Below are positions 30,165 through 62,174 of a DNA stretch of 64,000 bases, in pieces. Numbering within the stretch: position 1 is the stretch's first letter; each line of letters begins with the position of its first letter. This DNA comes from Lepidodermella squamata (Eukaryota > Animalia > Gastrotricha): contig JBLDXI010000024.1 in NCBI GenBank assembly GCA_047495785.1, positions 2,170,001 to 2,234,000 on the forward strand, read 5' to 3'. The notes beneath the pieces were generated by a model. That model did no database searches. It was not told the origin of the DNA and saw only the letters and a list, made by a program, of their open reading frames with translations. A program made the position numbers and the translations under genes.

Positions 30165-33100
30165 TTAGGAATTCATAGCTGTGAGCTCAGCGTCTTCAAT
30201 AGCTCGGCAAGCTATGTCGGCAGCCACACTTGGCAGCTCAATGGCGCTCGAGAGCGTTTTCTTGGTAACCTCAATATGCTCCTGGAATACTTGCATCATT
30301 TTGTTGACATGCGTCGTCAGTGGCATGACGTAATACTTGATCCCTTTGTCCTTTATCATCCTCAAAACATCCGACTCTTTCCTACCACATGGGCATCCAT
30401 CTGGGTGATCGTCACTGCCAGTGCCGAATTGGCGCCCATGAGGCGGGGCGTCTAGGATGTGAATCAAAACCTTGGCGCAACCCTCGCGCCAACTCAACAT
30501 AGCCGACCGTTCAAGACCATCTAACACAGCCTCGGCTCCATCCCCGCCCCCTTCAGCTCCAACCCCGCCAATAAACCGAATCACATCATCTGCATTGGTC
30601 AAATTAGTGCTCTGTAGTAGCTTTGCCCCATCGCAGTGGTCACGGTACGCAACCATTGCGAACTGCATGCAGGATGATGTCTTATCCAGTTCTTGAAGTT
30701 GAGGCATGGACGCCTCGATGATTCGTTTGATAGCGTTCTTACACTCCGTTATGTAGGAAGACATCGAGCCAGTTGCGTCAATGCAAAAGGCCATATCCAC
30801 TCCGATGAAATCCACCTTGTTGAAATCGTGACAGTCAAACTGATGCTCCTTAGCTATAAGGGAGTCAGAATGCCAGGCAGGCAGGTCGCAGAATTTCTTA
30901 TCCGACTCGCTGTGAGAGCCATGCGGGCAGTAGCAGTTGCATTTGTGGACATCCTCGTCGTCAGTTGGCATTGCCCAGTTTTGGTGGCTCCAGTAATCGC
31001 GGCACAAGTATTTGTCGTAAACAACGCCCAAGTTAGGGTAGAATCGTTCATCCTCATCGCAGTGAACGACCCCTGATCCCCAGAGCTCCTCGCCACACTC
31101 GTCTCCGCCTTTACATGGGATCAAATGGTAGTGAGCGCGGCCTTTGCGTTTGCACTGCTGGACGCAGGTTTCCGCGATCAGCATGTCGCCAGGCTCGTAA
31201 ACTTTTTTCACCTTCTTACCAGCTACAGTGTCTTCAACGGTGATAGACCCGTCGCTGGTCTTCGCGACACAGTAGCAAAACTCCATGTTGCGATGTGTGA
31301 CTGTCAGATGCTCCCCGTCGTGGCCCATCTTCTCGCGGCAGAAGCTGCCACACTGCGGACACTGCTCGCTACACTTGTGTTCTTTCAGGCAATTGTGCGG
31401 CTCATCATGAGTCCATTCGCCACTTGGCAGTACACGCTGACACGTGTTGATGTTGCGCTCCGGTCTGATGTAGATGTACTCCAACGGATTGCGAGGGTGT
31501 TCGAGATAACGTTCTTCCTCAACGTAGTGAACCTCGCAAATTCCGTCCATCTCACATTTAACCGGACAGTTGTGTGCCGTCTCGCAAAGATGCAGTTTGA
31601 TGGGGATGCCTTTGCCTTCAGGCCTAGGGTCTGGAATCATCATGGTGACATCGTCGTGATTATGCGGGCCAGTGCATGGATTGCCGCAAAAAATACACCG
31701 CCTTGGGCAGTGTGTCTCGTTACACCTGTGCAAGTCATGGCTTTCTGTCATTGATTTCGTGCAGGTGTTCGGGCAGTATTGGCACGGTGAAGTGCATTGA
31801 TGGCTCGACGAGCATTTGTGCCTTGCTGGGTTGATGTGATCCGCCGCATACGTGCAGGGGTTATCGCCGCAGATTTCACATAGGAAAGGGCAATCGTGTT
31901 GCTCTTTACTACATGTGTGACTGCCATCGTGACCGGCCGGGTTTTTGCAAGGCAGCGCTTCACCTTTACAAATGCTGCATCCCTCGTCGCATCGATGGTT
32001 CGTACCACAACCACACTCAAGAGTTCTCTCCAAGTCTTCGAGCTCTTTCTTCAGCGTCACGAATTCCTTATTCCGTTCGATTAACCCGGACAATGCGTAC
32101 ACCTCATTAGCCAAACGGGTTTCGTTGCCTTCGGCAGCTTTCAGTTCAAGTTCAATTGTTGAGGCATCCCTAGCAGTGGCATTTACACCAGACAATTGCA
32201 GTTTCACCTCATTCAAGTTCATCTTTATGGTAGCCAGGTCAGCTTGAACCGACTGGCAATTAGCGTCAATCTCTGCGATTAATTTGAATTCGGATAGATC
32301 AGCGAACAGTTTTTGGGAGTCGGTTTTCAAGTTCTGTAAAGCTGAACTCATCATTTCAAGCCGCATTTCAGCATCGTTGATGAATGCAAGTAGCTTTCCC
32401 GCCGAGGAACGTTTCTCCCTTAACACGGCGATTTCGGACTCGAGCCTCGTAATTTCGCTTTGGTTGGAGGCCTGCTTTGAGCAGACCACTGCTAGATCAG
32501 CCGCGCATTTCTGATGTGTTGCATTCAGCTCAGTTACCAGCACATGAATCCGTAGAAAATCATCACGTAACTTTGCTAGTCGGTTTTCCAGCAGCTTCAA
32601 CTCGGCCAGATTCGATTCGCGATCAGCATATGCAGCTTTCAATCTCTCCATCTCTTGCAGCATGCTTGCATCAGAAACGGGCCCAGCGTAAGGCCGTAAC
32701 TGCTCCTCTGCTTCCAGCTTCTTCTTTTCAACAAAATTCACTCTTTAATTAAAAGCGAGACCATGAAATAAGGTTCAAATAGAAACACATTTAATACTTA
32801 CTTTTCCTTGGCCGCAACAATCGCTGCTTCATCAACTGGCAAGCCGTCTTCATCAAAGCCGGTCTCCTCCATTTTCTTTACCTGCTGGGTGAACTTGGCC
32901 GTGAGCATGCTGAAGCGTTTAACAGCATCCTCGAGCTCCCTGATGTTTTCCGGAGAGGATTCAGCGGGAGGATCGGATCTAACGGGCAGAGCGGCCATTG
33001 ATGAAGTTTCAACGGTTCCAGCCATCGATTGATAGGTCTCGATCAATTGAGCCATTTGATCAATTGTGCCGAACTGCTTTTGACAAGTCTCCTCCTTATC

Positions 33101-36100
33101 TTTTCGTTCACGGACCTTCAACTCTGTTTCCGCACTTTCCGAATTCACCTTCGTCATCTCATCTCTGTTTGCCTGAAGAGAGTCATTGGCGGTATGAGAA
33201 AGGTTTTCCAAACGCGATCTCTCATCACCAAGGGCAATTGCTTCTTTTTTGCGAGCATCGAGGAGGCTTTCAGCTTCTCCCAAATTTGTATGTCCGCCGG
33301 AGCTATCCTTCTGCAAAGCTTTCAGTTCACCTTCAGCTGAACTCAGCAATGCCTCCATTACGACCAACTGAGACAAGCATTCCTGCCACTGCGCATATTC
33401 TGCTTTCAGTGCCTCAATAGAGGACGTTAGTGGCGAATCGCTGGAGCATTTTCGGATTTGTTCTTCGATGAATTCACAAACTTGACCAAGTTTTCTTTCA
33501 ATGGCAGCTGATTGCTCGTCTGCGTCACCCGACTCATCCATCGCATCGGCTGAGGGAGTGTCACGCGTCGGAAGAATCTGCGTAGTTCGGAATGCGGATG
33601 ACAATGCTGATGCAAGGGCCGCTTTCTTAGAGTTAAAAACTTCGAAAAATGATTTCGAATCGAGGGAAAGTCGAGTCTTAGAAATCAGTTCCTGTCGCTT
33701 TCCCTTAAAATTAGCCTCCTCGACTTCCTTTTCCGTAAGCAACTGTTGTAGACGGCCTTGTTGGGAGTGATATTCTTGCTTGGCTCTAACATCCGATAGC
33801 TCATTTTCCAGCGCAATTCGAGTCGCTTTCACAGTTTCATATTCCGTCTTGGTTAGTAGCAATTTTTGCTCGTAGCCACTTATGGCTGCCTGGTCCTCAG
33901 CGGCTAGACTAGCCTTCAGTTCCTGAAGCCGCTCTTGCTTCTCACGCCGATACTCCCCAGTAGCTTCTTTATGGCCTTTACGCTCGGCACATTTCAAAAA
34001 GCATGAATTGCACTTGTTCAAGCATAGAGAGAATCGACTTCCCAAAGCGCTAATTTTGCTTTGAATCCCAGTGTGAAAGGCCTTCTTTTCCTCCTGATTA
34101 AGAATCTGGTCAAGAGCAGCGAGCTCCTGAGCGGCGAAGGCCCTAACGATTTCCAGACGTTTGGTTGTGAAGTCAACCAAAAGGTCGTTGAACGAGCCCC
34201 ACATTTGATTGAAGTCAACCTTGCTAAACTTGGGATCTTGGTCGCTGAAGAGATGCTGCTTCAAGGCGGCAGTGATAGCTGAATACCCACCATCGTCAAC
34301 CTCACCCGGATAAACGAAAGCAACGCTACTCTGACTTATCTCAAGCTCTTCGTTTTCACTTTCCGGTTCTTCTTCACGCCCAGCGCGACTTTTGGGTCGC
34401 TTCGACTTCGAAGTTGAGACTTGCTCCGCTTTTGAAGTATCTCCCCATAGTGACAGGATGCGGCTCTCCGTTTGCATCATTTTGACACGTTTTATGTGCT
34501 CATCCCCAGCCTGCTCGTCGTCACGATTGACTTGGAGCATGACAACCTTCAATGATTGGAGCAGGGTCATCGAATCAGCCCAGCGATTCCTTTGCAGGCC
34601 AAGGTCCTCGTTGTTTTCATCGAAAAAGGACATGCGAAGGTCGTTCAGTTCGCCAACAAAAATGTCTCGGTTCGTGTAGTTGTTCAGACACTGGAAAACC
34701 AAGGCACCACTGAAAAGTCGCTTCAGAAAGTGATGGTCGCCTTTCTGATTCAACACTTGGATGTTGCGCTGGAATTCCTGCTGAGCTTTCTCACGCTCCT
34801 CTGACGCCACATCACGAACAGCCATCATCAGCAGGCCCTTGAAGTAGTTGTTACCCTTCACACGGTCAACGGCGCTGTTCAAATCACTGAAAAGACGATT
34901 CAGATACCGGTTGAAGTTCAAATCTTGGTTAAGGATGGTCACGTCACACACGGCTGCTAAAATGGTCAGCAGTTTGACTTCTTCCAGTTCATTACGACTG
35001 ATACTGAAAAGACCTTCGCAGTCAAGAATGACGAAATCCCGCTCAGCGCCATCGGACTCACGGACTAGCCTTGCGTAGCTCATCCATATTCCATCCGTAC
35101 ATCGCGTTGCAGCAACACTGAATCTCGTACCGAACAGCCGATTGAGCAGGTAGCTTTTACCAGAAGATTGCCGCCCGATGATACCGATGATTTTGACTGG
35201 GCGACCACCTGCCATGGATCCGAGCACACTTTCGAGATGACCGAGCGTAACGCGATCCGCCAGCTCAGCAATCTGACTTGCTTTTTCGGTGCCAAAGCGA
35301 TGTCGTTTCCCGTCGATCAGTGGCACCAAGTTGTTCTCCTCAATTGTGCAAATGTGAACAGGGACGCGTGTCAGAAGAATGCAGCCGAGTTGTTCATTCG
35401 TAATCGGCGATTCCTTCATCGCCACGGCATCGCAGGGTTTGATACCGACTGACAATTTGTAGGGGAAAGTTCTCAAATAACTCTCCAGTTGAGTTGGTTT
35501 GAAATTGGCATTCTCCTCCGGCAACACTAGGTCGTAGGAAATGTTTTCAGAGGAACCGATGAAATGGGCGATGGGACCATACTTCATGGAACTTGCGTAG
35601 ATAATGTCAACAACAGGGTTACCCCGAACTTTCTCACGCTTTACTTCGTCGCCCATAGCCTTGAGAGAAACGTCAGAAGCCAACCCTGGCAATATAGCAC
35701 TGTTGACTGATTTCGCCTCCATAATCGAGAGATAGATGTTTGCACTGTCGCAAAATAACTTCAAGCCCCACGATCGATCGCTTCTGAATGAATGGATGAT
35801 TTCGAAATTCATGTCATAAATATCGGTGTAGCTTTCATTTCGCATGATGAAGAATGACAGGTTTTTTGTCACATGGACGCTTTTGTAAAGCTCTCCATTT
35901 TTCGTGAGGAGCCGCTTCTTCACACTTTCGCGACCGGTATTGCTGCGATGGCACCACTCTTCTGCCTCCTTTGTCGTGAAGCTGTACAAATACAGATTAC
36001 CCCGTTCATTCAAAAGCAGAGCCTCGCGGCGGCCACCCATCATTGCCATAGAGACGATTCTACCATCCACTTTATTCGGAATGAGACTACTGCCTTTGCT

Positions 36101-37831
36101 GGTGTATTTCAAAGACTCATTTTCCGCTATCTCTTGAAGAGATAATGATTTCGATTCGTTATCGAGAACCGCAATCAAAACGGATGTAGTCGATTTATCG
36201 CCAGGTTCATAGGCCATCAGACAATCTCGAATATTCCAAACCGCGATTCGCTTGATCTCGCTGGCCGAAACTCGAACAAGAAGGGTATAAGGAAGCTTGT
36301 TGCTTCCTATGGCTACAATGAACAGTTTCCCATTCCACATCGGGTAGCATGAACGAACGAAACAAGTTCTCAGAATTTCAGTAATATCGTGAGAGACAGC
36401 AGGCTTTGGAGGCAGCAAGTCTCGCAAAATCTCCGGCGTGATTTGAACCGACCATGTTGAAGGGGCGAACGTAATAGCGTCGTACTCGCCTTCGTTTTTC
36501 TGAACAGCATTCACCATGCAAGGTATCAATTTGAGGGCTGTAGAACTGGTCCGTTTGGTCTGTGATGTATTGAAAATGACAGAGCATGCGTTTGAAAACG
36601 TGCTGATGGGCCGCGTTAATTCGCGACCTCTTCGATAAACAAGCTCCTCGAGGTTTTCTGCGCGAAGAATTTCCTCGATATCACGAAGCGCCTCATGGAC
36701 CTGTCCATACATGTTACGAGCGAAGAAATTCGCTATTTCGTCACTGAAATCCTTCGTAATAACACGGTAGTCGAAATTAAAGCGGTCTGTGCTGAAACTG
36801 TAGCTGTCAACAATTTTATAGGCCAGCTGTTCGGTCAAGAAGTCGACAAAGGCTGGGTAGTTCTTCTTCATGGTACCGTGCTTGTGCAAAAATGCATAAG
36901 GTCGATCGGCAAAATTGAGCCAAGTTGACTTTTTTTGCCGCAATGTATCCTCAATTCGAGGCAGCCATGATCCAAGCTCAAGAGAAAAAGATTTCCCGAC
37001 TTCGGCAAGGTCCTTGGCATATCGTTTATGCTCAACTGTGACTTTGTTAGCTATAGCATCGGTGGCTAAGTCACTGCCTAATCTTCGGACTTCAGAAGTT
37101 ACCGTAGGTGGGCTGTGATTCATCAGCCGGAGGAGTGAATATTTAAGGTCATGAACTTTCATGCCAATATCTTCTTTAGCCGGGCCTTTCGAGTCATCTA
37201 GGTCGGTGTAGAGAACATATCGGCTACCATTGTCGTTTAGCAAGAGCCCTCGTAGTGCGTGGTCTCCTAAATCCCGCGTCAGAAGCTCTGTCGAAGTGCT
37301 TACATTGATGACTTTAATCTCGTTGTTTTTGTGCTCTTCCAACCTGAACCTCGCCCTACCAACTACACTCGTGTCGACGAACGGATTTTTCGGCCCAGGG
37401 TAGAACTGGGAAATCCCTTCCGAGCCAAGGCAAAGAAAGATCGTCGGGGAAATATCTTCCAAGTAACGAAACAAGGTTACCAGAATGTTTTCCTTGTTGA
37501 AACTATCTTGCTTCAAGAATGACTCCTCAGCAACCAGAAGAAAGAGGATGTTATTATCTTTGACAGCGGCAAACAACTTTTTGTCAACATTATTGCCCGG
37601 AGGCAGGTCAAACTCAGGCTCAGCCAAGAGTTGCCTCGCCGTCGCAATCGCTTGATCACGCTGACCGAAACACGCTGCAACACTGCTGTTGTTGTTCATG
37701 GTAATCTGCAGATTTAGTTGATGCAAATCACGCAGATTGACGGCGACCTGCTCGATTGAAGCCATCTCAGCTGCGCCAGCTACTTCGCCGTAGAAAGGCG
37801 TATACAAGCGGCAGCGAGATGATGATGCCAT
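30165..37831 (-). CDS. Giant (2535 aa) GB1/RHD3/VLIG-type GTPase + coiled coil + Cys/His-rich zinc-binding repeats + C-terminal VWA domain; copy 1 (exons 37831-32802, 32742-30165)
   Basis: G1 GRQSSGKS, G2 RCTDGIW, G3 DCEG, and GBP-type G4 VRD. A long heptad region is followed by many C-x3-C-x2-C...H..C repeats and a VWA domain with DATGSM and GGGDGAEAV. A 59-bp phase-2 intron (AA|GTAAGT...TTAAAG|A) joins the two long ORFs in frame. Confidence 0.9.
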
Positions 37832-37876
37832 GAGTAAGCAAAAATTAGGTAAATACCTAAATGTAAAAGGAAACTT

Positions 37877-40830
37877 TTATAAAGTATAATCGAATATTCG
37901 TCGTCTTTTTAGCTGCTCATCCTCTGATTCAACTATCTGGGAGATGTCACTATTAGCAAAGCAAGCATTTAAAGCAAAGTTTTCTTGTGTCTTGCTGAGC
38001 ATGTTTCCACGATATAGTTGGATAATACCAATGTTCCTTTGGCTCTGAGAGCGGGTTCTGAATATCGGCAGTAACCGCATTTTTGTCCAATTTTCTCGCC
38101 ATGTCATTGAAGCCTCTATTGACAGCAATGTGAAGTGCAGTTTTATCTGAAGTTCGGCTATTATTCAATATCTGCACTTTGCACATCGAGTAGCACCAGC
38201 TCAAATCAAATTACTAACGTTCTTCCGCCGAACGGGTCGAGGTAATAGGCGGCGATATAGTGTTCACGGTACTGAAAACCTCACGACAGGCCACAATAAA
38301 TTTGTCGACAGGTACCTTTAACTTGCGACCCATATCGTAAACCAGTCCTTCTAGTCCTTCAGAACGAAGAAGTTCTTGGATGTCACTGTGAGCTACATGG
38401 ACCTGCCCATTCATGTTTTCAGTGAAGAAACTTGCCAGTTGGTCACTCAACATCTTTGCAACTACAATGAATTCGAAATTGAACTGGTCTGAGCTGATGC
38501 TGTAGCTGTTAATCACCGTCAAGGTCAATTCGTCAGCCAATTTGTTGACGATAGCTGGGTATTTATTTCTCATGGCGACTTGCTCGAGGATAAACATATA
38601 AGGCCGATCAAGCCAACAGCCATTAAAGCTTTGCTTTTGACCCCGCAATTTATCATCGATTCGAGGCAGCAAGGTCCCAAGATCCGTGGTAAACTTGACG
38701 CTGACACTTTCCAAATCTCTTGTGTACTTCTTATATGCTCAATGACGATGCCATTTACAAGGGATGCAGCCGATACCGTGATGATGTTGTTGACGTGGGC
38801 AACTATGGCCTCGACAGCAATGGAGCTATGCTTGCTTATCTTCAATAGTGATTCAATCAACGGGTTCACGATGGGGGCCATGTTGATATCAGGTTCCACC
38901 GGCACGATTTCTGCTGCTAAATAATACATACCAATTATTCCATACCATTTTTCGTCATCCTTGCCATTAACAATTAGGTATGGGACGAGAAAAGGAACTA
39001 ATTCATCAAACTCGAAAGATGAGGCTTTGGATAGCATTAGAGAAAAAATGACCAGGTCCAAAGCCTCATCTATGTTGGATGGGTAATGATTGGCTCGATT
39101 TTTTTCGGTAAAATCCCCATTTCAGATGAAACGTTGATAAGGGGTCGTTCATAAAGACTTTTTCCATTTTTTTCGACCCTACCCTACCTCTTGTGTTTCT
39201 TTCGAGCACCCCTTCTTTCTCTTGCTATTTAGATGGAACCCCCTCATCATTACCCTGAGAAACTTGGAAATTATTTTTTGACCTGCTGTGTGCGGCTTGA
39301 GAGTATATAGTCATTACTACAGCTGTTAGCCGCCAGCAGTCATTGCATGAGGACTCCTAGGTGTTTCCTTATTGGGCGCTGGGGAGCTGACAGCACTAAC
39401 TGATTGGTTCTGTATAACTACCAATCCTAGTGCTGACTCACGGGGACTTATTGACGTTCAATTAAACTCGCTCTCTGGTTGGTTGAAAGACACGGGAGCG
39501 GCAATGTTGGCGTGCGCAGACGCGAGGCTATTGGTTGCGTAACAGGATGCTGAGCGTGTGCGCAGCGCGGACTAATGCCACAGCTCAACAGCGCACTAAT
39601 GCTGTTGCAGCTGTGTACTGTGTCGTGCGTCGTGCGACTTGGTGAGTACCGAGTACCCCCTAGAAGCCGTTCTGTCCGAATTTCGAGACCCCACCTCCCA
39701 CCCCCTCCTCCCTCAAGTCTCGGACGTCTTTGGTGAACGATCCCTAATAACAACTGGAATTATCTCTATAGCTCACATTTGCCACGCAATTTAGGTTTCC
39801 TATTTCCTATCCCAATTTGTAGCTAGTGAGCAAAAGAAGCTACCTGGAATGACTGCTGGCGGGACTGGAGACGGTCTAGACTCTAAAACCATCTCCATGT
39901 TTTCCGTGCTGAATTCCAAATGAATGCAAATTTCATGGAACTTTGGTCTGTTTTCAGGTGACTGTTCCAAGCACATCGATATCATTGATGCCAACGCTTT
40001 GCAAAGCTTATTCTTCGGCAACGCACCCTCCTTCCCCTGGGAAATTCTAGGTTATTAATTAGTCGTATTACGTAACCTCAACTTACCGGGTACTCGAAAA
40101 AGGCTAAGCGAAACGCAACCACTCCAAAAGCCCAGACATCAGTCATTTCGGAGGGCCGGCGGCTTCTCTGTAGTTCAGGCGCTTGAAATCTGGCATCAAC
40201 CTGACCCACACTCATCCTAAACACTTCATTGCGAAAATTCGTAGATTAGTGATGAAAAGTGTCTCACAAGTGGAATGGCCTGAGTAAACCGAGTTTCAAT
40301 AGCTTATGAGCTTCATCGCAGAAATAGATAGTATCTGTCGTTATATTCCCGCTTATGAGTTTTTGCGAATGCAAGTATGATGCAGCTGATGCTAGTTGCG
40401 TTAGAAGTGACATTACTTCATCCACTGTCAGAGGCTCCTTGCTCTCTGCCTTCCTTACAACGTGCTGTTCGAGAGTCCCAAACGGGCAGAATTCACTTAT
40501 TAAGTGGTACTCTTCCGACATGGTTAATACTGAATTGAGTTTGACGATATGCTGATGCTCGAGGGTGGTGAGTATTTTTGAAGCCTGAAAAATTGCGAGT
40601 TACGAAATTAAATATTTCAAAACAAAAGCCTTTACGTCACTTAGCGCATCTTGAACGGATTTTTTTACTTGACTGCCGAGTTTTCGGCCGATTTTAGCGA
40701 TAGATATCGTTTTGAGAACCACATAACTTTCCGATTCGCCTTTTTGCTTAAGCAGGATTGTTGCGTTGACATCGCCCTGCTTTTTGAGTTCTCGAGCTGC
40801 TTCCAAACTATCAAAAGGAGCTGGCAGCAT
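37877..40830 (-). pseudogene. Disrupted pseudokinase + GTPase-N-like helical domain + ankyrin-fragment gene
   Basis: Kinase subdomains VVLKTI, HQHIVKL, LISEFCPFGTL, FQAPE, TDVWAFGV and CLEQSPENRPKF are present, but HRD is replaced by SGN and there is no DFG. The gene is interrupted by a MITE (39141-39744), a TGA (39122-39124) and a 2-nt frameshift (~38733). Ankyrin remnant DKTALHIAVNRGF. Confidence 0.75.
39141..39744. mobile_element. PIF/Harbinger-like MITE
   Basis: TIRs GGGGTCGTTCATAAAGAC / GTCTTTGGTGAACGATCCC with a TAA target-site duplication at 39138-39140 and 39745-39747. Confidence 0.8.
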
Positions 40831-41437
40831 TTTTAAATTACAATAAACGCCTTTCTATGCTACGTTTATCGCCAACGAAAATGATAACTTGACCGCTGCA
40901 TGGGTATCAGCTGAGGATCGGCATTTCCATGGTAATTCAAGCCTACGCACCGCTCGTTTTTGCGGCAAAGTACGTAGATATTAATGTCTCCAACAAGACT
41001 TATCTCATGATGATTACTCTTACGCTTTGTATTTTAATCCTCGATGCCAGAGATAAGGTCGAGTCAAAAAAATGAAAAAGTGCTAATTTCAGATGGATTG
41101 TTCGCAACGTACCTCATGACAACCAGATAAGCCGCTTGAGTCCTTTTTGAAGATATATATCACTTTTCGTCTACCCTGTTTTCACGCAACACAATCATTA
41201 TCATCGTACGATTAGAAATTTCACAGTTATCAAGGAACCGAACGTCGTTTATCGCAGCGTTGCTAGGAATAGCACAGGATGTCGTGCAATTTTAATCACA
41301 TAGGTATCATATGAGGAAATTATTTCATGGTAATTTAAGCGCAAGGTGCGATCTTGGATCCCAGGGCTGCGCCAGGGATGCACTCTAACCATGACACTGT
41401 TTTCGCCTATATTAAACCTCGTCTGTAACCCGTCTCC

Positions 41438-41534
41438 TTTTCGCACGAGACCCGTTACGTAAGGCGAGACTAACTAAACCGGTAGTCTCGGCTTTCTACC
41501 CGGCGTCCTGCCTTACGTAACGGTTGTGCGAAAA
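41438..41534. repeat. Short inverted repeat / small MITE-like hairpin
   Basis: TTTTCGCAC..CCGTTACGTAAGGC ... GCCTTACGTAACGG..GTGCGAAAA. Confidence 0.5.
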
Positions 41535-50570: not shown

Positions 50571-53500
50571 CTAGGAATTCATAGCTGTGAGCTCAGCGTC
50601 TTCAATAGCTCGGCAATGTATATCGGCAGCCGCACTTGGCAGCTCAATAGCGCTAGAGAGCGTTATCTTGGTGACGTCAATATGCTCCTGGAATACTTGC
50701 ACCATTTTGTTGACATGCGTCGTCAGTGGCATGACGTAATACTTGATCCCTTTGTCCTTTATCATCCTCAAAACATCCGACTCTGTCCTACCACATGGAC
50801 ATCCATCTGGGTGATCGTCACCGCCAGAGCCGAATTGGCGCCCATGAGGCGGGGCATCTAGGATGTGAATCAAAACCTTGGCGCAACCCTCGCGCCAGCT
50901 CAACCTAGCCGCCCGTTCAAGACCATCTAACACAGCCTCGGCTCCATCCCCACCCCCGTGAGCTCCAACCCCGTCGATGAACCGAATCACTTCATCTGCA
51001 TTGGTCAAATTAGTGCTCTGTAGCAGCTTTGGCCCATCGCAGTGGTCACGGTACGCAACAATTGCGAACTGCATGCAGGATGATGTCTTATCCAGTTCTG
51101 GAAGTTGAAGCATGAAAGCCTCGATGATTCGCTTGATAGCGTTTTTACACTCGACTATGTAGGGAAGCATCGAGCCAGTTGCGGCAATGCAAAAGACCAT
51201 ATCCACTCCGATGAAATCCACCTTGTTGAAATCGTGACATTCAAACTGATGCTCCTTAGCTATAACGGAGTCCGAATGCCAGGCAGGCAGGTCGCAGAAT
51301 TTCTTATCCGACTCGCTGTGAGAGCCATGCGGGCAGTAGCAATTGCATTTATGGATATCCTCGTCGTCAGTTGGCACCGCCCAGTTTTGGTGGCTCCAGT
51401 AATCGCGGCACAGGTATTTGTCGTAAACAACGGCCAGATTAGGGTCCTTCTCATCGCAATGACGGACCCCTGATGCCCGAAGCTTTTCATCACACTCCTC
51501 GCCCCCCTTACATGGGATCAAATGGTAGTGAGCACGTCCTTTACGTTGGCACTGCAATGCGCAGGTTTCCTCAAAACTATCGTATTCTACGACTGTTGTT
51601 TTCTTATCTATGTTACGGTGGAATGCTCGATGCTTCCCATCATGGCCGATTTTCTCGCGGCAGAAGCTGCCACATTGCAGGCACTGTTCGATGCACTTGT
51701 GTTCCTTCAAGCAGTCATGCGACTCATCGTGGGTCCATTCGCCACTTGGCAGTACACGCTGACACATGTTGATATTGTGCTCCTGTCTGATGTAGATGTA
51801 CTCCAACGAATTACGTGGAGGGTCGAGATAACGGGTTTCTTCAGTATAGAGAACCTCGCATATTCCGTCCCTCTCACATTTAACAGGGCAGATGTGTTCC
51901 TTCTTGCAAAGGTGCATTTTGACCGGGGCTCCTCGACTCTCAGCCCTAGGGTCTGGAATTGTCATTGCTATATCCTCATGATCATGCAGGCCAGTGCAAG
52001 GGCCACCACAGAAAATGCACCGCCTTGGGCAGTAGGTCTCGTTACACGCGTGCAAGTCATGGCTTTCTGTCATCGATTTCGTGCAGGTGTTTGGGCAGTA
52101 CTTGCAAGGTGAAGTGCACTGATGGCTGAACGAGCATTCTGGAAGCTCTCCGCTGTCGCTCCCTGGCTCTTCTTCAAGGCTAGCGCTGCTTTTCTGTCGC
52201 TTTGACATCGATTTTGAGGTTTGCTTCTCTTTTCCTCCGCACAGGCTGCGGCTCTCCGTTTGCATCATTTTGACACGATTTATATGCTCATCACCAGCCT
52301 GCTTATCGTCAAGAATGACTTGGAGCATGGCAACTTTTAGTAATTGAAGCAGGGTCATCGAATCAGCCCAGCGATTTTTTTGTAGGCCAAGGTCTTCGTC
52401 GTTCTCATCTAAAAGTAACATGCGAAGGTCGTTCAGCTCGCTAACGAAGGCTTGGTTCGTGTACCTGTTCAGACACCGGAAAACCAAGGCGCCACTGAAA
52501 AGCCGCTTCAAAAAGTGATGGTCGCCTTTTTGGTTCAACGCTTGGATGTTGCGCTGAAAATCCTGTTGAGCTCTTTCTTGCTCGTATGGCTCCACGTCTC
52601 GAACAGCCGTCATTAGCAGGCCCTTGAAGTAGTTTTTACCCTTCACACGGTCAACGGCGCTGTTATAATCACTGAAAAGATGATTCAGATACCGGTTGAA
52701 GTTCAAATCCTGGTTAAGGATGGTCACGTCACACACGGCTGCTAAAATGGTCAGCAGTTTGACTTCTTCCAGTTCATTACGACTGATACTGAAAAGACCT
52801 TCGCAGTCAAGAATGACAAAATCCCGCTCAGCGCCATCTGACTCGCGGACTAGCCTTGCGTAGCTCATCCAGATTCCGTCCGTGCATCGTGTTGCAGCAA
52901 CACTGAATCTCGTACCGAACAGTCGATTGAGCAGGTAGCTTTTACCAGACGATTGCCGCCCGATGATACCGATGATTTTGATTGGGCGACCACCTGCCAT
53001 GGATCCAAGCACACTTTCGAGATGACCGAGGGTAACGCGATCCGCTAGCTCAGTAATCTGACTTGCCTTTTCCGTGCCAAAGCGATGACGTTTCCCGTCG
53101 ATCAGTGGCACCAAGTTGTTCTCCTCAATCGTGCAAATGTGAACAGGGACGCGTGTCAGAAGTATGCAGCTGAGTTGTTCATTCGTAATCGGCGATTCCT
53201 TCATCGCCACAGCATCGCAGGGTTTGATTCCTACAGACAATTTGTACGGGAAGGTTCTCAAATAGCTCTCCAGTTGAGTTGGTTTGAAACTGGCGTTCTC
53301 CTCCGGCAACACTAGGTCGTAGGAAATGTTTTCAGAGGAACCGATGAAATGGGCGATGGGACCATACTTCATGGAACTTGCGTAGATAATGTCAACAACA
53401 GGGTTACCCCGAACTTTCTCACGCTTCACTTCGTCGCCCATGGCCTTGAGAGAAACGTCAGAAGCCAAGCCAGGCAATATAAAGCTTTTGACTGATTTCG

Positions 53501-55616
53501 CCTCCATAATCGACAGATAGATGTTCGCGCTGTCACAAAATAACTTCAAGCCCCACGATCGATCGCTTCGGAAGGAATGGATGATTTCGAAATTCAGGTC
53601 GTAAATATCAGTGTAGCTTTCATTTCGCATGGCGAAGAATGACAGGTTTTTTGTCACGTGGACGCTTTTGTAGAGCTCCTTATTTTGCGAGAGGAGCCGT
53701 TTCTTCACGCTTTCACGACCGGTATTGCTGCGATGGCACCACTCTTCTGCTTCCTTTGTCGTGAAGTTGTACAGATACAGATTACCTCGATCATTCAAAA
53801 GCAGGGCCTCGCGGCGACCGCCCATCATTGCCATGGAGACGATTTTACCATCCACGTTATTCGGAATAGGACTACTGCCTTTGCTCGTGTATTTTAAAGA
53901 CTCATTTTCTGCTATCTCTTGGAGAGATATTAACTTTGATTCGTTATCGAGAACCGCAATCAAAACGGATGTAGTCGATTTATCGCCAGGTTCATATGCC
54001 ATAAGACAATCTCGAATATTCCAAACAGTGATTCGCTTGATCTCGCTGGCCGAAATTCGAAGAAGGAGGGTATAGGGCAGCTTGTTGCTTCCTATGGCTA
54101 CAATGAAGAGTTTCCCATTCCACATCGGGTAGCTTGAACGAACGAAACAAGTTCTCAGAATTTCAGTTATGTCGTAAGAGACAACAGGCTTTGAAGGTAG
54201 CAAGTCTCGCAAAATCTCAGGCGTGATTTGAACCGACCACGTGGACGGGGCGAATGTGATAGCGTCGGACTCGCCTTTGTTCTTCTGAACAGCATTCACC
54301 ATGCAAGGTATCAATTTGAGGGCTGTAGAACTGGTCCGTTTGGTCTGTGATGTATTGAAAATGACAGAGCATGCGTTTGAAAACGTGCTGATGGGCCGCG
54401 TTAATTCGCGACTTCTGCGATAAACAAGCTCCTCGAGGTTTTCTGCGCGAAGTATTTCCTCGATATCACGAAATGCCTCGTCGACCTGTCCATACATGTT
54501 ACGAGTGAAGAAATTGGCTATTTCGTCACTGAAATCCTTCGTAATAACACGGTAGTCGAAATTAAAGCGGTCTGCGCTGAAACTGTAGCTGTCAACAATT
54601 TTATAGGCCAGCTGTTCGGTCAAGAAGTCGACAAAGGCTGGATAGTTCTTCTTCATGGTACCGTGCTTGTGCAAAAATGCATAAGGTCGATCGGCAAAAT
54701 TGAGCCAAGTTGACTTTTTTTGCCGCAATGTATCCTCAATTCGAGGCAGCCATGATCCAAGCTCAAGAGAAAAAGATTTCCCGACTTCGGCAAGGTCCTT
54801 GGCATATCGTTTATGCTCAACTGTGACTTTGTTAGCTATAGCATCGGTGGCTAAGTCACTGCCTAATCTTCGGACTTCAGAAGTTACCGTAGGTGGGCTG
54901 TGATACATCAGCCGGAGGAGTGAATATTTAAGGTCATGAACTTTCATGCCAATATCTTCCTTAGCCGGACCTTTCGACTCGTCCATCTCGTGGTAGAGAA
55001 CATAACGGCTGCCATTATCGTTTAGCAAGAGGCCTCGTAGTGCGTGGTCTCCCAAATCCCGCGTCAACAGCTCTGTTGAAGTGCTCACAGTGATGACTTT
55101 GATGTCGTTGTTTTTGTGCTCTTCTAGCCTGAACCTCGCCCTACCAGCTACACTCGTGTCGATGAACGGATTTTTCGGCCCAGGATAAAACTGAGTAATC
55201 CCTTCTGAACCAGGGCAAAGAAATATCGACGGGGAAATATCTTCCAAGTAACGAAACAAGGTTACCAGAATGTTTTCCTTGTTGAAACTATCTTGCTTCA
55301 AGAATGACTCCTCAGCAACAAGAAGAAAGAGGATGCTGCTATCTTTGATAGCGGCGAACAACTTTTTGTCAGCATTCTTGCCCGTTGGGAGGTCAAACTC
55401 AGGCTCAGCCAAGAGTTGCCTCGCCGTCGCAATCACTTGATCACGCTGACCGAAACACGCTGCAACACTGCCGTTGTTGTTCATGGTAATCTGCAGATGT
55501 AGTTGATGCAAATCACGCAGACTGACGGCGACCTGCTCAATCGAAGCCATCTCAGCCGCGCCCGCTACTTCGCCGTAGAAAGGCGTGTACAAGCGGCATC
55601 GAGATGGCAATGCCAT
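50571..55616 (-). CDS. Giant GTPase-Cys/His-VWA gene, copy 2 (1681 aa, intronless, coiled coil deleted, MIDAS Asp lost)
   Basis: Highly similar to copy 1 over the N-terminus and GTPase. The junction ...GSDSGELPECSFSHQC skips the coiled-coil region in frame. The VWA domain reads CIAATGSM. Confidence 0.88.
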   Translation of the reverse strand: MALPSRCRLYTPFYGEVAGAAEMASIEQVAVSLRDLHQLHLQITMNNNGSVAACFGQRDQVIATARQLLAEPEFDLPTGKNADKKLFAAIKDSSILFLLVAEESFLKQDSFNKENILVTLFRYLEDISPSIFLCPGSEGITQFYPGPKNPFIDTSVAGRARFRLEEHKNNDIKVITVSTSTELLTRDLGDHALRGLLLNDNGSRYVLYHEMDESKGPAKEDIGMKVHDLKYSLLRLMYHSPPTVTSEVRRLGSDLATDAIANKVTVEHKRYAKDLAEVGKSFSLELGSWLPRIEDTLRQKKSTWLNFADRPYAFLHKHGTMKKNYPAFVDFLTEQLAYKIVDSYSFSADRFNFDYRVITKDFSDEIANFFTRNMYGQVDEAFRDIEEILRAENLEELVYRRSRELTRPISTFSNACSVIFNTSQTKRTSSTALKLIPCMVNAVQKNKGESDAITFAPSTWSVQITPEILRDLLPSKPVVSYDITEILRTCFVRSSYPMWNGKLFIVAIGSNKLPYTLLLRISASEIKRITVWNIRDCLMAYEPGDKSTTSVLIAVLDNESKLISLQEIAENESLKYTSKGSSPIPNNVDGKIVSMAMMGGRREALLLNDRGNLYLYNFTTKEAEEWCHRSNTGRESVKKRLLSQNKELYKSVHVTKNLSFFAMRNESYTDIYDLNFEIIHSFRSDRSWGLKLFCDSANIYLSIMEAKSVKSFILPGLASDVSLKAMGDEVKREKVRGNPVVDIIYASSMKYGPIAHFIGSSENISYDLVLPEENASFKPTQLESYLRTFPYKLSVGIKPCDAVAMKESPITNEQLSCILLTRVPVHICTIEENNLVPLIDGKRHRFGTEKASQITELADRVTLGHLESVLGSMAGGRPIKIIGIIGRQSSGKSYLLNRLFGTRFSVAATRCTDGIWMSYARLVRESDGAERDFVILDCEGLFSISRNELEEVKLLTILAAVCDVTILNQDLNFNRYLNHLFSDYNSAVDRVKGKNYFKGLLMTAVRDVEPYEQERAQQDFQRNIQALNQKGDHHFLKRLFSGALVFRCLNRYTNQAFVSELNDLRMLLLDENDEDLGLQKNRWADSMTLLQLLKVAMLQVILDDKQAGDEHINRVKMMQTESRSLCGGKEKQTSKSMSKRQKSSASLEEEPGSDSGELPECSFSHQCTSPCKYCPNTCTKSMTESHDLHACNETYCPRRCIFCGGPCTGLHDHEDIAMTIPDPRAESRGAPVKMHLCKKEHICPVKCERDGICEVLYTEETRYLDPPRNSLEYIYIRQEHNINMCQRVLPSGEWTHDESHDCLKEHKCIEQCLQCGSFCREKIGHDGKHRAFHRNIDKKTTVVEYDSFEETCALQCQRKGRAHYHLIPCKGGEECDEKLRASGVRHCDEKDPNLAVVYDKYLCRDYWSHQNWAVPTDDEDIHKCNCYCPHGSHSESDKKFCDLPAWHSDSVIAKEHQFECHDFNKVDFIGVDMVFCIAATGSMLPYIVECKNAIKRIIEAFMLQLPELDKTSSCMQFAIVAYRDHCDGPKLLQSTNLTNADEVIRFIDGVGAHGGGDGAEAVLDGLERAARLSWREGCAKVLIHILDAPPHGRQFGSGGDDHPDGCPCGRTESDVLRMIKDKGIKYYVMPLTTHVNKMVQVFQEHIDVTKITLSSAIELPSAAADIHCRAIEDAELTAMNS

Positions 55617-55839
55617 GAGTAAGCTCAAGATTTAAATTTCTAAACTTGAAATGCAACGTTTTTTGATAAATGATGCAGCTTATAGGATCTAGCGTGATAT
55701 TGTACTGCAATTCCAGTTTTATGATGAATCGCTCTTTTCAGTTTATATTACTTTTCGATGTTGGCTACAAGAATTGAAACCGTTTTGAAATTTTGGCTAT
55801 TTTAAAATTGGTAGGTAACCGAGGTGCGAAAAGTGACTC

Positions 55840-56378
55840 ACAGATGAACTGGCCTGAGTAAGCCGAGTTTCACTTGGGTATGAGCAGAAATATATCGGTC
55901 GTGATATTCCCGCTAATGAATTTTCGCGAATGTAAGTATGCTGCAGCTGATGCAATTTGCGTTAGAAGGGAGAGGACTTTACAACGTGCTCTGCCTACAT
56001 TACAACGTGCTGTTCGAGGGTCCCAGAATTCACTCAAAAAGTGATATTCTTCCATTATCGCGAATACGGAATTAAGCTTCACAGTATATATTGATGCTCG
56101 ATGGTAGCGAGCGATTTAGAAGCCTGAAAAATTGGTTTTAAAATAAAAGTATTCACAACAAAGGCATTTACGTCATTTAACGGCACTTGAACTTATTTTT
56201 TGCTTGGCTGTTGATTTTTCGGCCGATTTCAGCGATTTTAGCAATGGTTCGTTTCAAGAACCATGTTACATGTCCCTTTCGATTCGCCTTTTTGTTTGAG
56301 GAGGATTGTTGCGTTGACATCGCCCTGCTTTTTGAGTACTCGAGCTGTTTCGAAACTATCAAAAGGAGCTGGCAGCAT
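55840..56378 (-). pseudogene. Second, more degraded and truncated copy of the pseudokinase gene
   Basis: MLPAPFDSFETARVLKKQGDVNATILLKQKGES and LLTQIASAAAYLHSRKFISGNITTD match 40264-40830, with frameshifts. The upstream flank is also similar (56380-56840 vs 40830-41290). Confidence 0.8.
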
Positions 56379-56920
56379 TTTGGAACCCTTTATCTCTACT
56401 ATGCAACGTTTATTGCCAACGAAAATGATAACGAAATGCATTTTGAATCACCTTGTTATCATCTGAGGATCTGCATTTTCATGGAAATTCAAGCCTACGC
56501 AACTCTCTTTTATGCGGCGAAGTACGTAGCAGATAGTAATTTCTCAAACAAAAGACGTATCTTATACTGATTACTACTTACGCTTTGAATTTTAATCGTT
56601 GCTGGTGTAGATAGGGTCGAGACAAAAGGACGGAAGGTTCGCAATGCACCTCATGACAGATAGGCCGCTTGGGTCATTTTTCCATAGATATATCAGATAT
56701 CACTCTATTTTATCATCCACGTTTAATCTGAGTTTAGCTGTTTTCATGCGCCAGTAATCAGTCGCATCATAGAAATTTCCGAGTTATCAGCGCCCCCTAG
56801 CCCACTTTATCAGCTTTACTAGGATTAGCCCTGGATGTCGTCATGCAAATGGGTAATTCCATGACTTTGTTGCAGATGTCTCTCTGCAACATAGAGCTGA
56901 TAGAGTGCTCACTCGCCATC

Positions 56921-58766: not shown

Positions 58767-59596
58767 CAGTATAAAATATCTGGTTGTGCTTCATTGATGG
58801 ATATAGTTCATCTTTGAAATACTCGGATTTAGGCTTTTTCATTTCCGTTTGAAGGTGGCGGGACAGAAGTAAGAAGCACGGTTTTTTAACGTGAATGAGA
58901 ATGCAAAAACAAAAGACGCTTTACTTGTAGCCTCCGGCCTTCAAACTGATGTAGACAACCGTAAATCCGAGCCGAGTTATTCAACAATATTGGCGAAAGG
59001 CGAATTTCCTTAGCTGTCCTCGATAAGAACCGGAAACATGTATCGCTGTTATATATGGCGCCGAAAAAACATCAATGTTTTTCAATTGCGTCAATGCAAA
59101 ATGCTTCAATGCGTCAATGCTACTCCGATAAATCCACCTTGTTGAAATCGTGACAATCAAACTGATGCTCCTTAGCTATAACGGAGTCCGAATGCCAGGC
59201 AGGCAGGTCGCAGAATTTCTTATCCGACTCACTCTGATACCATCGCGAATTTCAGACAAATTTTATTCCTCGTGGTTAGAGAGATAATGAAATATTGCGA
59301 GGCAAATACAATATTGTCCGTATTTGTTAACATCTTTACTTTAAGCTCAATTCCGGATCCCCTTAGATTCTTGGCTTATTGCCAGACTTGGCTTATTGAG
59401 AGAACAACTGCACCCTGTTGGTCTCAAAAGATCTTATTCTTCACCCGACTTAGGACAGGGTGACCTAACTTCCATTCAAGCTCGTCAAATTGACGGTTAT
59501 GATCTCCACTTGCAAGCAAAAAACTAAAGGGGATTCGGAATTGAGCTTACATGAATGCTATTTTTCATTTGTTCATCTTTTTCATTGTTCTGTTAA

Positions 59597-62174
59597 CTAG
59601 GAAATCATAGCTGTGAGCTCAGCGTCTTCAATAGCTCGGCAATGTATATCGGCAGCCGCACTTGGCAGCTCAATAGCGCTAGAGAGCGTTATCTTGGTGA
59701 CGTCAATATGCTCCTGGAATACTTGCACCATTTTGTTGACATGCGTCGTCAGTGGCATGACGTAATACTTGATCCCTTTGTCCTTTATCATCCTCAAAAC
59801 ATCCGACTCTGTCCTACCACATGGACATCCATCTGGGTGATCGTCACCGCCAGAGCCGAATTGGCGCCCATGAGGCGGGGCATCTAGGATGTGAATCAAA
59901 ACCTTGGCGCAACCCTCGCGCCAGCTCAACCTAGCCGCCCGTTCAAGACCATCTAACACAGCCTCGGCTCCATCCCCACCCCCGTGAGCTCCAACCCCGT
60001 CGATGAACCGAATCACTTCATCTGCATTGGTCAAATTAGTGCTCTGTAGCAGCTTTGGCCCATCGCAGTGGTCACGGTACGCAACAATTGCGAACTGCAT
60101 GCAGGATGATGTCTTATCCAGTTCTGGAAGTTGAAGCATGAAAGCCTCGATGATTCGCTTGATAGCGTTTTTACACTCGACTATGTAGGGAAGCATCGAG
60201 CCAGTTGCGGCAATGCAAAAGACCATATCCACTCCGATGAAATCCACCTTGTTGAAATCGTGACATTCAAACTGATGCTCCTTAGCTATAACGGAGTCCG
60301 AATGCCAGGCAGGCAGGTCGCAGAATTTCTTATCCGACTCGCTGTGAGAGCCATGCGGGCAGTAGCAATTGCATTTATGGATATCCTCGTCGTCAGTTGG
60401 CACCGCCCAGTTTTGGTGGCTCCAGTAATCGCGGCACAGGTATTTGTCGTAAACAACGTCCAAGTTAGGGTAGAATCGTTCATCCTCATCGCAGTGAACG
60501 ACCCCTGATCCCCAGAGCTCCTCGCCACACTCGTCTCCGCCTTTACATGGGATCAAATGGTAGTGAGCGCGGCCTTTGCGTTTGCACTGCTGGACGCAGG
60601 TTTCCGCGATCAGCATGTCGCCAGGTTCGTAAACCTTGTTCACTTTCTTGCCAGCCACAGTGTCTTCAACGGTGATAGAACCGTCGCTGGTCTTCGCGAC
60701 ACAGTAGCAAAACTCCATGTAGCGATGTGTGACTGTCAGATGATCACCGCCGTGGCCGATTTTCTCGCGGCAGAAGCTGCCACATTGCAGGCACTGTTCG
60801 ATGCACTTGTGTTCCTTCAAGCAGTCATGCGACTCATCGTGGGTCCATTCGCCACTTGGCAGTACACGCTGACACATGTTGATATTGTGCTCCTGTCTGA
60901 TGTAGATGTACTCCAACGGATTTCGAGGGTGTTCGAGATAACGTTCTTCCTCAATGTAGCGAACCTCGCAAATTCCGTCCATCTCACATTTAACCGGGCA
61001 GTTGTGTGCCGTCTCGCAAAGATGCAGTTTGATAGGGGCTCCTCGACTCTTAGCCCTAGGGTCTGGAATCATCATGGTGACATCGTCGTGATCGTGCGGG
61101 CCAGTGCATGGGCTACCGCAGAAAATACACCGCTCTGGGCAGTGGGTCTCGTTACACCTGTGCAAATCGTGGCTTTCTGTCCAAGATTTTATGCAGGTGT
61201 TCGGGCAGTACTGGCACGATGAAGTGCATTGATGGCTCGACGAGCATTTGTGCATTTTTGGGTTGATGTGATCCACCGGGTACGTACAGACATTTACGAC
61301 GCAGATTTCACATAGGAAAGGGCAATCGTGTTGCTCTTTACTACATGTGTGACTGCCATCGTGACCGGCCGGGTTTTTGCAAGGCAGCGCTTCACCTTTA
61401 CAAATGCTGCATCCCTCGTCGCATCGATGGTTCGTACCACAACCACACTCAAGAGTTCGCTCTAAGTCTTCGAGCTCTTTCTTCAGCATCACGAATTCCT
61501 TATTCCGTTCGATTAGCCCGATCAATGCGTACACCTCATTAGCCAAACGGATTTCGTTGCCTTCGGCAGCTTTCAGTTCAAGTTCAATTGTTGAAGCATC
61601 CCTAGCTGTGGCATTCAGACCGGACAACTGCTGTTTCACCTCATGCAAGTTCATCTTTATGATAGCCAGGTCAGCTTGAACCGACTGCCAATTAGCGTCA
61701 ATCTCTACGATTGATTTGAATTCGGATAGATCAGCGAACAGTTTCTGAGAGTCTGTTTTCAAGTTCCGTAAAGCCGCACTAATCCTCGACATCCGCATTT
61801 CAGCATCGTTGATGAATGCAAGTAGCTTTCCCGCCGAGAAACTGTTCTCCCTTAACACGGCGATTTCGGACTCGAGCCTCGTAATTTCGCTTTGGTTGGA
61901 GGCCTGCTTTGAGCAGACCACTGCTAGATCAGCCGCGCATTTCTGATGTGTTGCATTCAGCTCAGTTCCCAGCAGATGAATCCGTAGAAAATCATCACGT
62001 AACTTTGCTAGTCGGTTTTCCAGCAGCTTCAACTCGGCCAGATTCGATTCGCGATCAGCATATGCTGCTTTCAATCTCTCCATCTCTTGCAGCATGCTTG
62101 CATCAGAAACGGGCCCAGCGAAAGCCCGTAACTGCTCCTCTGCTTGCAGCTTCTTCGTTTCAGCCAAATTCGCC
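59597..62174 (-). CDS. Giant GTPase-family gene, copy 3: terminal exon only (coiled coil + Cys/His repeats + VWA); the upstream exon is not in the window
   Basis: Same acceptor position and phase as copy 1 (TTAAAG|G GCG AAT TTG) and an 856-aa open frame. Sequence 5' of the acceptor is replaced by repeat DNA. Confidence 0.8.

What the first reader, a model, noticed from the sequence alone, without database searches (positions are those of the whole stretch)
38214..38990. Pseudokinase carries a ~250-aa domain paralogous to the N-terminus of its neighbouring giant GTPase
After repairing a 2-nt frameshift, the kinase gene encodes ...SLLKISKHS...IVIEHKKYTRDLESVSVKFTTDLGTLLPRIDDKLR...DRPYMF...YPAIV...SYSISSDQFNFEF...FFTENMNGQVH...DIQELLRSEGLEGLVY. 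This aligns by eye with GTPase residues SLLRLMNHS...VTVEHKRYAKDLAEVGKSFSLELGSWLPRIEDTLR...DRPYAF...YPAFV...SYSFSTDRFNFDY...FFARNMYGQVH...DIEEILRAENLEELVY (~36570-37250). It is far more diverged than the GTPase copies are from each other, so the sharing is old. Inference: a homotypic coupling domain or decoy linking the two partners, analogous to death-fold pairings.
Basis: partly seen in the sequence, partly recalled or inferred. Interest (0 to 1): 0.78.

Follow-up and report, generated by a model that had tools for sequence, protein, structure and literature searches.

The report
GTPase helical domain copied into neighbouring pseudokinase
A dead-kinase gene next to a giant immune-type GTPase gene carries an old, diverged copy of one helical domain of that GTPase, but the copy here is frameshifted, its sister copy is deleted, and nothing shows that it links the two proteins.

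Summary
On the minus strand, about 210 codons (38259-38902) in the last coding exon of a five-exon pseudokinase gene match residues 217-425 of the giant GTPase gene just downstream. BLASTP gives E=4e-43 at 45% identity for the part after the break and E=7e-5 at 30% for the part before it. A real 2-nt frameshift at 38733-38734 interrupts the match.

The domain is native to the GTPase. A distant family member (P0003) is collinear over the whole N-terminal region. A structure model places a separate all-helical block at about residues 229-425.

The kinase gene therefore captured a whole domain long ago. Flank synonymous sites are saturated. The roughly 111-codon core is younger (dS 0.85), which suggests later gene conversion. 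The open frames and dN/dS of about 0.4 argue that the copy coded for protein for a long time.

This copy is now broken, its ankyrin tail has decayed, and the second unit in the window has lost the domain. A profile search of 1.84 billion proteins found no other architecture. Three related loci have no kinase partner. The fold is not a death fold. The coupling or decoy idea stays untested.

The scan already noted the same thing about 7 kb beyond this window (s1-422681).

The parts
40636..40830 (-). Pseudokinase gene K1, exon 1 (N-lobe; beta3 Lys kept, Gly-loop degenerate)
   Evidence: ATG at 40830, GTAAAG donor
40268..40584 (-). K1 exon 2 (alphaC to activation segment; HRD reads SGN, DFG reads LLR)
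   Evidence: Pfam PK_Tyr_Ser-Thr E=3e-13; alignment to MELK and to JAK-family pseudokinase domains
40087..40216 (-). K1 exon 3 (APE region)
   Evidence: Pfam kinase E=1.6e-4; 51-nt intron upstream
39844..40036 (-). K1 exon 4 (end of C-lobe plus linker)
   Evidence: Pfam kinase E=4e-3; ends in phase 1 with a GTAGCT donor
39070..39843 (-). Unusually long intron 4 (774 nt; the others are 50-51 nt)
   Evidence: The acceptor 'catag' joins phase 1 in frame to exon 5; no Rfam match
38217..39069 (-). K1 exon 5: 56 non-homologous codons, then the GTPase-derived helical domain (38259-38902), ending at stop 38214-38216
38733..38734 (-). 2-nt frame break inside the domain
   Evidence: Read directly from the sequence. 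The alignment to the GTPase continues across it, so it is not an intron
38318..38684 (-). Less diverged core of the captured domain (68% nt identity to 36616-36979); probable older gene-conversion patch
   Evidence: blastn; third-position identity 0.5-0.64 against 0.2-0.36 in the flanks; dS 0.85 against saturated
37877..38204 (-). Decayed ankyrin tail (about 2.5 repeats spread over three frames, with stops)
   Evidence: Three-frame translation; Pfam Ank E=0.011
36557..37183 (-). Source-type domain in giant GTPase GT1 (residues 217-425), an all-helical block
30165..37831 (-). GT1 gene: 1677-aa GTPase ORF (32798-37831), 59-nt intron (32743-32801), 858-aa VWA ORF; about 2535 aa in all
   Evidence: GTAAGT...AG intron, in frame; Pfam GBP/URGCP/RHD3 and VWA_4; family hits of 2000-2600 aa
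54342..54968 (-). The same domain in GTPase copy GT2 (96-97% identical to GT1)
55828..56695 (-). K2: remnant of a second pseudokinase copy (promoter region, exons 1-2 only; 7 frame-breaking indels). Everything from intron 2 to 47 nt before the GT2 start codon is deleted, domain included

Best explanation
This is a lineage-specific chimeric gene. A whole helical domain of the giant VLIG-type GTPase-VWA gene (residues about 217-425) was copied at the DNA level into the pseudokinase-ankyrin gene lying directly upstream in the same tandem array. It landed after the kinase exons. It brought or acquired its own stop, so the ankyrin tail became untranslated and decayed.

The kinase-plus-helical-domain protein (about 560 aa) was kept as coding sequence for a long time. 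Its roughly 111-codon core was later overwritten at least once by gene conversion from a neighbouring GTPase copy.

In this unit the gene is now disabled by a 2-nt frameshift. In the next unit the whole segment is deleted.

Shown: the homology, the GTPase-to-kinase direction, the domain boundaries, the in-frame splice, the mosaic age and the damage. Inferred: past function of the chimera, and gene conversion as the cause of the younger core. Any present role as a coupling module is unproven.
For: - Homology: E=4e-43 and E=7e-5, continuous across the break.
- Direction: the metagenomic family member P0003 (2646 aa) is collinear with GT1 residues 8-848 (E=2e-66). It shares the HK+Y+KD and NFF motifs within the domain. 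So the domain belongs to the GTPase family.
- Discrete unit: in the AF2 model of GT1 residues 100-600, a helical block at about 229-425 (pLDDT 70-87) lies between a low-confidence region and a disordered linker, followed by beta-rich structure. The 216-aa model has 8 helices, pLDDT 72.8.
- Gene model: exon phases and GT..AG sites join kinase exon 4 to exon 5 in frame.
- Long coding life: there are no stops in the 111 and 172 coding-frame codons, although flank synonymous sites are saturated. Neutral simulation gives P(no stop) of 0.02 or less. Composition alone gives 0.0015 for 111 codons. dN/dS is 0.33-0.40.
- What neutral decay looks like here: K2 differs from K1 about equally in exons (80-85% identity) and non-coding DNA (78-79%), and has 7 frame-breaking indels in about 500 nt.
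- Mosaic age: core dS is 0.85, flanks are saturated.
- Damage: frameshift and broken ankyrin tail; K2 deletion.
Against: - The 2-nt break could be an assembly error, and transcription and splicing of exon 4 to exon 5 are unverified.
- dN/dS between a constrained GTPase and a neutral copy would also fall below 1, so 0.4 is weak on its own.
- Repeated gene conversion from an intact donor could keep the core open without selection. The open-frame argument is therefore strong only for the flanks.
- The younger core could instead reflect locally slower evolution.
- An alternative origin by two deletions within the array, rather than one insertion, cannot be excluded.
Confidence: 0.6

Rival explanations
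1. Working paired system. The pseudokinase's copy of the helical domain is a live homotypic docking or decoy module that binds the same domain of the giant GTPase and so regulates or guards it. The frameshift is an assembly error or a very recent loss in one array member.
For: - Whole-domain capture with matching boundaries.
- In-frame splicing to intact kinase exons.
- Long retention of the open frame and dN/dS below 1.
- A core kept similar to the partner.
- Only one break in about 1700 nt of K1 coding sequence.
- Earlier notes report several kinase-GTPase fusion genes in this genome (not tested here).
Against: - Every copy seen is damaged: K1 frameshift and K2 deletion, and the copies in the next unit according to note s1-422681.
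- No partner kinase or second domain copy at three related loci.
- No other architecture in 1.84 billion proteins.
- No interaction evidence of any kind.
- No resemblance to a known pairing fold.
Confidence: 0.15
2. Pure duplication debris. A fragment of an old GTPase copy was left between a kinase remnant and an ankyrin remnant by deletions in an unstable tandem array, and it never made a functional protein.
For: - The array is visibly unstable. GT2 is an in-frame deletion fusing GTPase residues 1-1163 to VWA residues 309-858.
- K2 has lost 2.2 kb.
- The ankyrin tail is broken.
- The K1 domain is frameshifted.
Against: - Both coding frames are open over sequence that is saturated at synonymous sites (P between 0.0015 and 0.02 under neutrality).
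- All alignment gaps other than the single break are multiples of three.
- The acceptor is phase-compatible with kinase exon 4.
- The captured piece matches the domain boundaries.
- K2 shows that true debris of much younger age is already full of indels.
Confidence: 0.17
3. Reverse direction. The domain is native to the kinase-ankyrin family and was acquired by the GTPase.
For: None found.
Against: - The distant GTPase relative P0003 carries the region collinearly and has no kinase nearby.
- Both GTPase copies here carry it.
- K2 and, by earlier notes, the wider pseudokinase-ankyrin family are described without it (not tested here).
Confidence: 0.03

Closest known systems
Chimeric genes made by partial tandem duplication or exon capture, with ectopic gene conversion between array members
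   Same: A piece of one gene is copied into its neighbour, spliced in frame, and later patched by conversion. The array also shows deletions and fusions (GT2, K2).
   Different: What was captured here is one complete, otherwise unknown helical domain of a giant GTPase. The recipient is a pseudokinase.
VLIG-type / URGCP / GBP-Sey1-like giant GTPases with a C-terminal VWA domain (unnamed family in ciliates, bdelloid rotifers, Anaeramoeba and some plants)
   Same: GT1 has the P-loop GRQSSGKS and Pfam GBP, URGCP_GTPase, RHD3_GTPase and VWA_4 hits. It gave 91 family hits of 1000-2800 aa. N-terminal residues 10-175 and 590-850 are conserved across the family.
   Different: The 200-500 region that holds the shared domain is the variable part. 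It is alignable only to the closest relative, P0003. No family member outside this genome was seen with a kinase neighbour.
JAK-type JH2 and other Asp-to-Asn pseudokinases; the pseudokinase-ankyrin family of this genome
   Same: Kinase fold with the catalytic Asp replaced by Asn (SGN, against HGN in JH2). The best PDB matches include the TYK2 and JAK pseudokinase domains. An ankyrin tail remnant is present.
   Different: DFG is also lost, only about 2.5 decayed ankyrin repeats remain, and a foreign helical domain is inserted.
Death-fold homotypic pairings and plant NLR integrated decoys
   Same: Only the logic: two neighbouring genes share one domain.
   Different: The fold is a bundle of about 210 aa with eight helices and no death-fold match. 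No interaction, no intact partner and no conservation of the pairing were found.

Membership tests
Protein kinase superfamily (fold) | Significant match to kinase profiles across the N- and C-lobes | tested here: met
   Searched exon by exon. Exon 2: PK_Tyr_Ser-Thr E=3e-13, Pkinase E=1.5e-9. Exon 3: E=1.6e-4. Exon 4: E=4e-3. PDB kinases down to E=3e-10.
Active protein kinase | Catalytic Asp of HRD and Mg-binding Asp of DFG | tested here: not met
   HRD position reads SGN in the alignment to MELK 'HRDLKPEN' and to JAK JH2 'HGN'. The DFG position reads LLR. It is therefore a pseudokinase. K2 keeps the same SGN.
GBP / Sey1 / URGCP (VLIG-type) GTPases | P-loop G domain matching the family profiles | tested here: met
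   GBP 32.9 bits (cutoff 21.1). URGCP_GTPase 51.2 bits (just under its cutoff of 55). RHD3_GTPase 37.6 bits. PDB GBP2 and Sey1 at E=1e-6. Family hits named 'VLIG-type G domain-containing protein'.
Giant GTPase-VWA family | GTPase and C-terminal VWA in one polypeptide of about 2000-2600 aa | tested here: met
   A 59-nt GTAAGT..AG intron joins the two ORFs in frame. GT2 is an in-frame GTPase-VWA deletion fusion. Relatives carry both Pfam domains. There is no RNA evidence.
Death-fold domains (DD/DED/CARD/PYD) | Six-helix bundle of about 90 aa, detectable by profile or fold search | tested here: not met
   No Pfam hit. The model is an eight-helix bundle of about 210 aa. Foldseek PDB best E=0.02 with TM of 0.3 or less. 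VIA best Z=7.4, within the noise for helical bundles. Atlas TM below 0.5 by the query. No death fold appears among the matches.
Homotypic coupling or integrated-decoy pair | Both partners intact and expressed; physical interaction of the shared domains; pairing conserved | tested here: inconclusive
   The intactness requirement is not met in either unit of the window. Pairing is absent at three related loci.
Ankyrin-repeat protein | Readable ankyrin repeats in frame | tested here: not met
   Only about 2.5 repeat remnants, spread over three frames with stops, downstream of the stop codon. Pfam Ank E=0.011.

The most novel reading that the evidence does not exclude
The pseudokinase-plus-helical-domain chimera is, or recently was, a regulator that docks onto the giant GTPase-VWA protein through like-with-like contacts of the shared helical domain. 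Gene conversion would keep the two interfaces matched. This would be an animal analogue of regulator/effector pairs among immune GTPases, or of integrated decoys, and would fit this genome's apparent habit of fusing kinases to immune-type GTPase parts.
Probability: 0.12. Interest if true: 0.7.

Novelty: new member of a known kind. Interest (0 to 1): 0.3.

Why it matters
The finding defines a discrete, previously unrecognised helical domain in the variable N-terminal region of an unstudied family of giant GTPase-VWA proteins. It also documents how an unstable tandem array moves whole domains between neighbouring genes.

If an intact, expressed kinase-plus-domain gene exists elsewhere in this genome, the shared domain would be a concrete handle for asking how these giant GTPases are regulated. 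As it stands, this copy is best read as a decaying chimera and not as a new signalling system.

Tried and rejected
- Word-index protein search with GT1 residues 215-430: no hit.
- Profile search of 1.84 billion representatives with alignment A2: two hits. Both are bacterial repeat proteins (a cadherin-repeat RTX protein and an HTH-repeat protein), so both are spurious.
- ESM Atlas feature search: best score 0.78, below any useful level.
- Fold searches (Foldseek PDB, VIA wide, Atlas): only generic helical bundles.
- First MAFFT alignment (A1) misplaced the upstream piece. It was redone with the trimmed piece as A2.
- A tiny intron that bypasses the frameshift: rejected. The only frame-correcting GT..AG candidate is 32 nt long and would remove residues that align well to the GTPase.
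- Extending the homology into the first 56 aa of exon 5 or past GTPase residue 425: not significant.
- jackhmmer with the domain against the 91 family proteins: nothing at E of 1e-3 or better. The region is too variable.
- Exact look-up of GT1 in public assemblies: not on record, so the organism could not be confirmed. The gastrotrich attribution in earlier notes is untested.
- Rfam scan of 37500-41500, covering the long intron: no match.
- Literature search for the GTPase-VWA family: nothing specific.
No DNA or RNA reads were laid, and read laying was not used.
- The spliced kinase model was searched exon by exon. The joined protein was never built or searched.

Full report
**Setting**

The window is intron-bearing eukaryotic DNA with about 40-50% G+C and sparse long ORFs. 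The region of interest lies on the minus strand and is a tandem array.

GT1 is a 1677-aa ORF (32798-37831). It has a GBP/Sey1/URGCP-type G domain at residues 876-1072 (Pfam; PDB GBP2 and Sey1 at E=1e-6). A 59-nt GTAAGT...AG intron (32743-32801) spans its stop codon and joins it in frame to the 858-aa VWA ORF (30165-32741). The gene therefore encodes about 2535 aa.

This architecture matches an unstudied family, labelled 'VLIG-type G domain' or 'VWFA domain' proteins of 2000-2800 aa. Members occur in ciliates, bdelloid rotifers, Anaeramoeba and a few plants.

A second unit, GT2 (50571-55616), is an in-frame deletion that fuses GTPase residues 1-1163 to VWA residues 309-858. A third VWA copy lies at 59600-62170, and its GTPase runs off the window.

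**The kinase gene**

Directly upstream of GT1 lies a five-exon gene with canonical splice sites and 50-51-nt introns. The exons are 40830-40636, 40584-40268, 40216-40087 and 40036-39844, followed by a 774-nt intron and exon 5 at 39069-38217.

I searched it exon by exon and did not build or search the joined protein. Exons 2-4 match kinase profiles at E=3e-13, 1.6e-4 and 4e-3.

In the alignment to MELK and to JAK-family pseudokinase domains, the HRD motif reads SGN. The DFG position reads LLR. So the gene is a pseudokinase.

Exon 4 ends in phase 1, and the acceptor at 39070 restores the frame of exon 5 exactly.

**The observation**

Exon 5 holds 56 codons with no GTPase similarity. About 210 codons homologous to GT1 residues 217-425 follow.
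- Downstream piece: E=4e-43, 45% identity over 155 aa.
- Upstream piece: E=7e-5, 30% over 81 aa. Only 1 of 2000 shuffles reached its score.

The two pieces are separated by an extra 'at' at 38733-38734. The alignment to the GTPase continues without interruption across that point, so this is a true frame break and not an intron. A stop follows at 38214-38216.

Downstream, about 2.5 ankyrin repeats survive only as fragments in three frames, with stops. That remnant ORF ends at 37877, 45 nt before the GT1 start codon.

**Whose domain is it?**

The closest family member in the databases is P0003 (2646 aa, from a metagenome contig). It is collinear with GT1 residues 8-848 at 24% identity, E=2e-66. 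Within the shared segment it shows the same small motifs, HK+Y+KD and NFF.

Across the wider family, GT1 residues 10-175 and 590-850 are conserved. Residues 200-500 are variable.

An AlphaFold model of GT1 residues 100-600 is shallow (five sequences, mean pLDDT 56). It shows one reasonably confident helical block at residues about 229-425 (pLDDT 70-87). A low-confidence region precedes it, and a disordered linker and then beta-rich structure follow. The 216-aa segment alone folds as eight helices at pLDDT 72.8, though only one of the five models was good.

The kinase gene therefore carries a copy of one complete structural unit of the GTPase, and the direction of transfer is GTPase to kinase.

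Fold searches found only generic helical bundles:
- Foldseek against the PDB: best E=0.02, TM of 0.3 or less.
- VIA: best Z=7.4.
- Atlas: TM below 0.5 by the query.

This is not a death fold.

**Age and selection**

GT1 and GT2 are 96-97% identical in this domain (dS 0.06). The kinase-borne copy is 33-47% identical to them.

Divergence is mosaic:

| Segment | Third-position identity | dS | dN/dS |
|---|---|---|---|
| Flanks (GT1 217-281 and 396-425) | 0.20-0.44 (random expectation 0.26) | infinite (5' flank), 1.75 (3' flank) | not defined (5'), 0.33 (3') |
| Core, about 111 codons (GT1 282-395; blastn 38318-38684 vs 36616-36979, 68%) | about 0.5-0.64 | 0.85 | 0.40 |

The capture is therefore old. 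The core looks overwritten later, most simply by gene conversion from a neighbouring GTPase. An earlier follow-up (s1-422681) reported a near-identical core of about 115 aa in the next unit, 7 kb beyond this window, and read it the same way. I could not read that DNA.

Despite saturation, the coding frames are open for 111 and 172 codons. All alignment gaps except the single break are multiples of three.
- Neutral simulation of the GTPase segment gives P(no stop) of 0.023 at 85% nt identity, falling to zero in 1000 runs at 57%.
- Base composition alone gives 0.0015 for 111 codons.

K2 serves as a local control for neutral decay. It is the kinase remnant upstream of GT2 (55828-56695). Its identity to K1 is 80-85% in exons and 78-79% in intron and upstream DNA. 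It has 7 frame-breaking indels in about 500 nt. It has also lost everything from intron 2 to 47 nt before the GT2 start codon.

I conclude that the chimera was a coding gene for most of its history, that its ankyrin tail was abandoned early, and that the frameshift is recent or possibly an assembly error.

**Tests of the coupling or decoy idea**

- A profile of the domain (alignment A2) searched against 1.84 billion representative proteins gave two hits. Both are bacterial repeat proteins and spurious. The word search gave none. No other architecture is known.
- The loci of three relatives carry no kinase and no second copy of their own N-terminal region within 10 kb: P0003, P0004 and the Adineta steineri protein P0021.
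- Within this window, neither kinase copy is intact.
- No tool here could test binding.

**Verdict**

The sequence observation is correct and significant, and the shared piece is a real domain of old origin. It is best explained as domain capture and later gene conversion within an unstable tandem array. That produced a kinase-plus-helical-domain chimera which is now decaying.

The scan has already reported the same phenomenon in the adjacent unit. Interest is modest (0.3). It would rise if an intact, expressed copy were found.

Noticed in passing
window 32743-32801 (-): The 1677-aa GTPase ORF and the 858-aa VWA ORF are one gene. A 59-nt GTAAGT...AG intron spans the stop codon and joins them in frame (AA|A = Lys), giving about 2535 aa.
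   Followed up: partly
window 50571-55616 (-): GT2 is an in-frame internal deletion that fuses GTPase residues 1-1163 to VWA residues 309-858 in one 1685-aa ORF. It loses the coiled-coil and Cys-rich middle part.
   Followed up: partly
window 37855-37878 and 55640-55661 (-): Homology between the two units starts only 47 nt upstream of the GTPase start codon. It includes a conserved pyrimidine-rich '...tttag' about 24 nt before 'cttactcATG'. This may be the acceptor of a 5'UTR intron or a trans-splice site. The K1 ankyrin remnant ORF ends 45 nt before the GT1 start, so the two genes may share a transcription unit.
   Followed up: no
window 39070-39843 (-): Intron 4 of the pseudokinase gene is 774 nt long, against about 50 nt for the others. 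It contains a G+C-rich stretch with several CCAAT-like boxes. No Rfam match was found.
   Followed up: partly
window 8315-11284 (-): A 989-aa ORF with internal tandem repeats of about 270 nt (8489-10080, 75-91% identical), with only weak Pfam hits.
   Followed up: no
window 59083-59237: An isolated 150-nt fragment of the VWA gene (78% aa identity to VWA1 residues 611-657) lies between K2 and the third VWA copy. It is further debris of array rearrangement.
   Followed up: no
GT1 residues about 462-580 (window about 36090-36445, -): The structure model shows a run of short beta strands after the helical domain, which may be part of a propeller (low to moderate confidence). The pre-G-domain region 590-850 is the most widely conserved N-terminal part of the family.
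   Followed up: no
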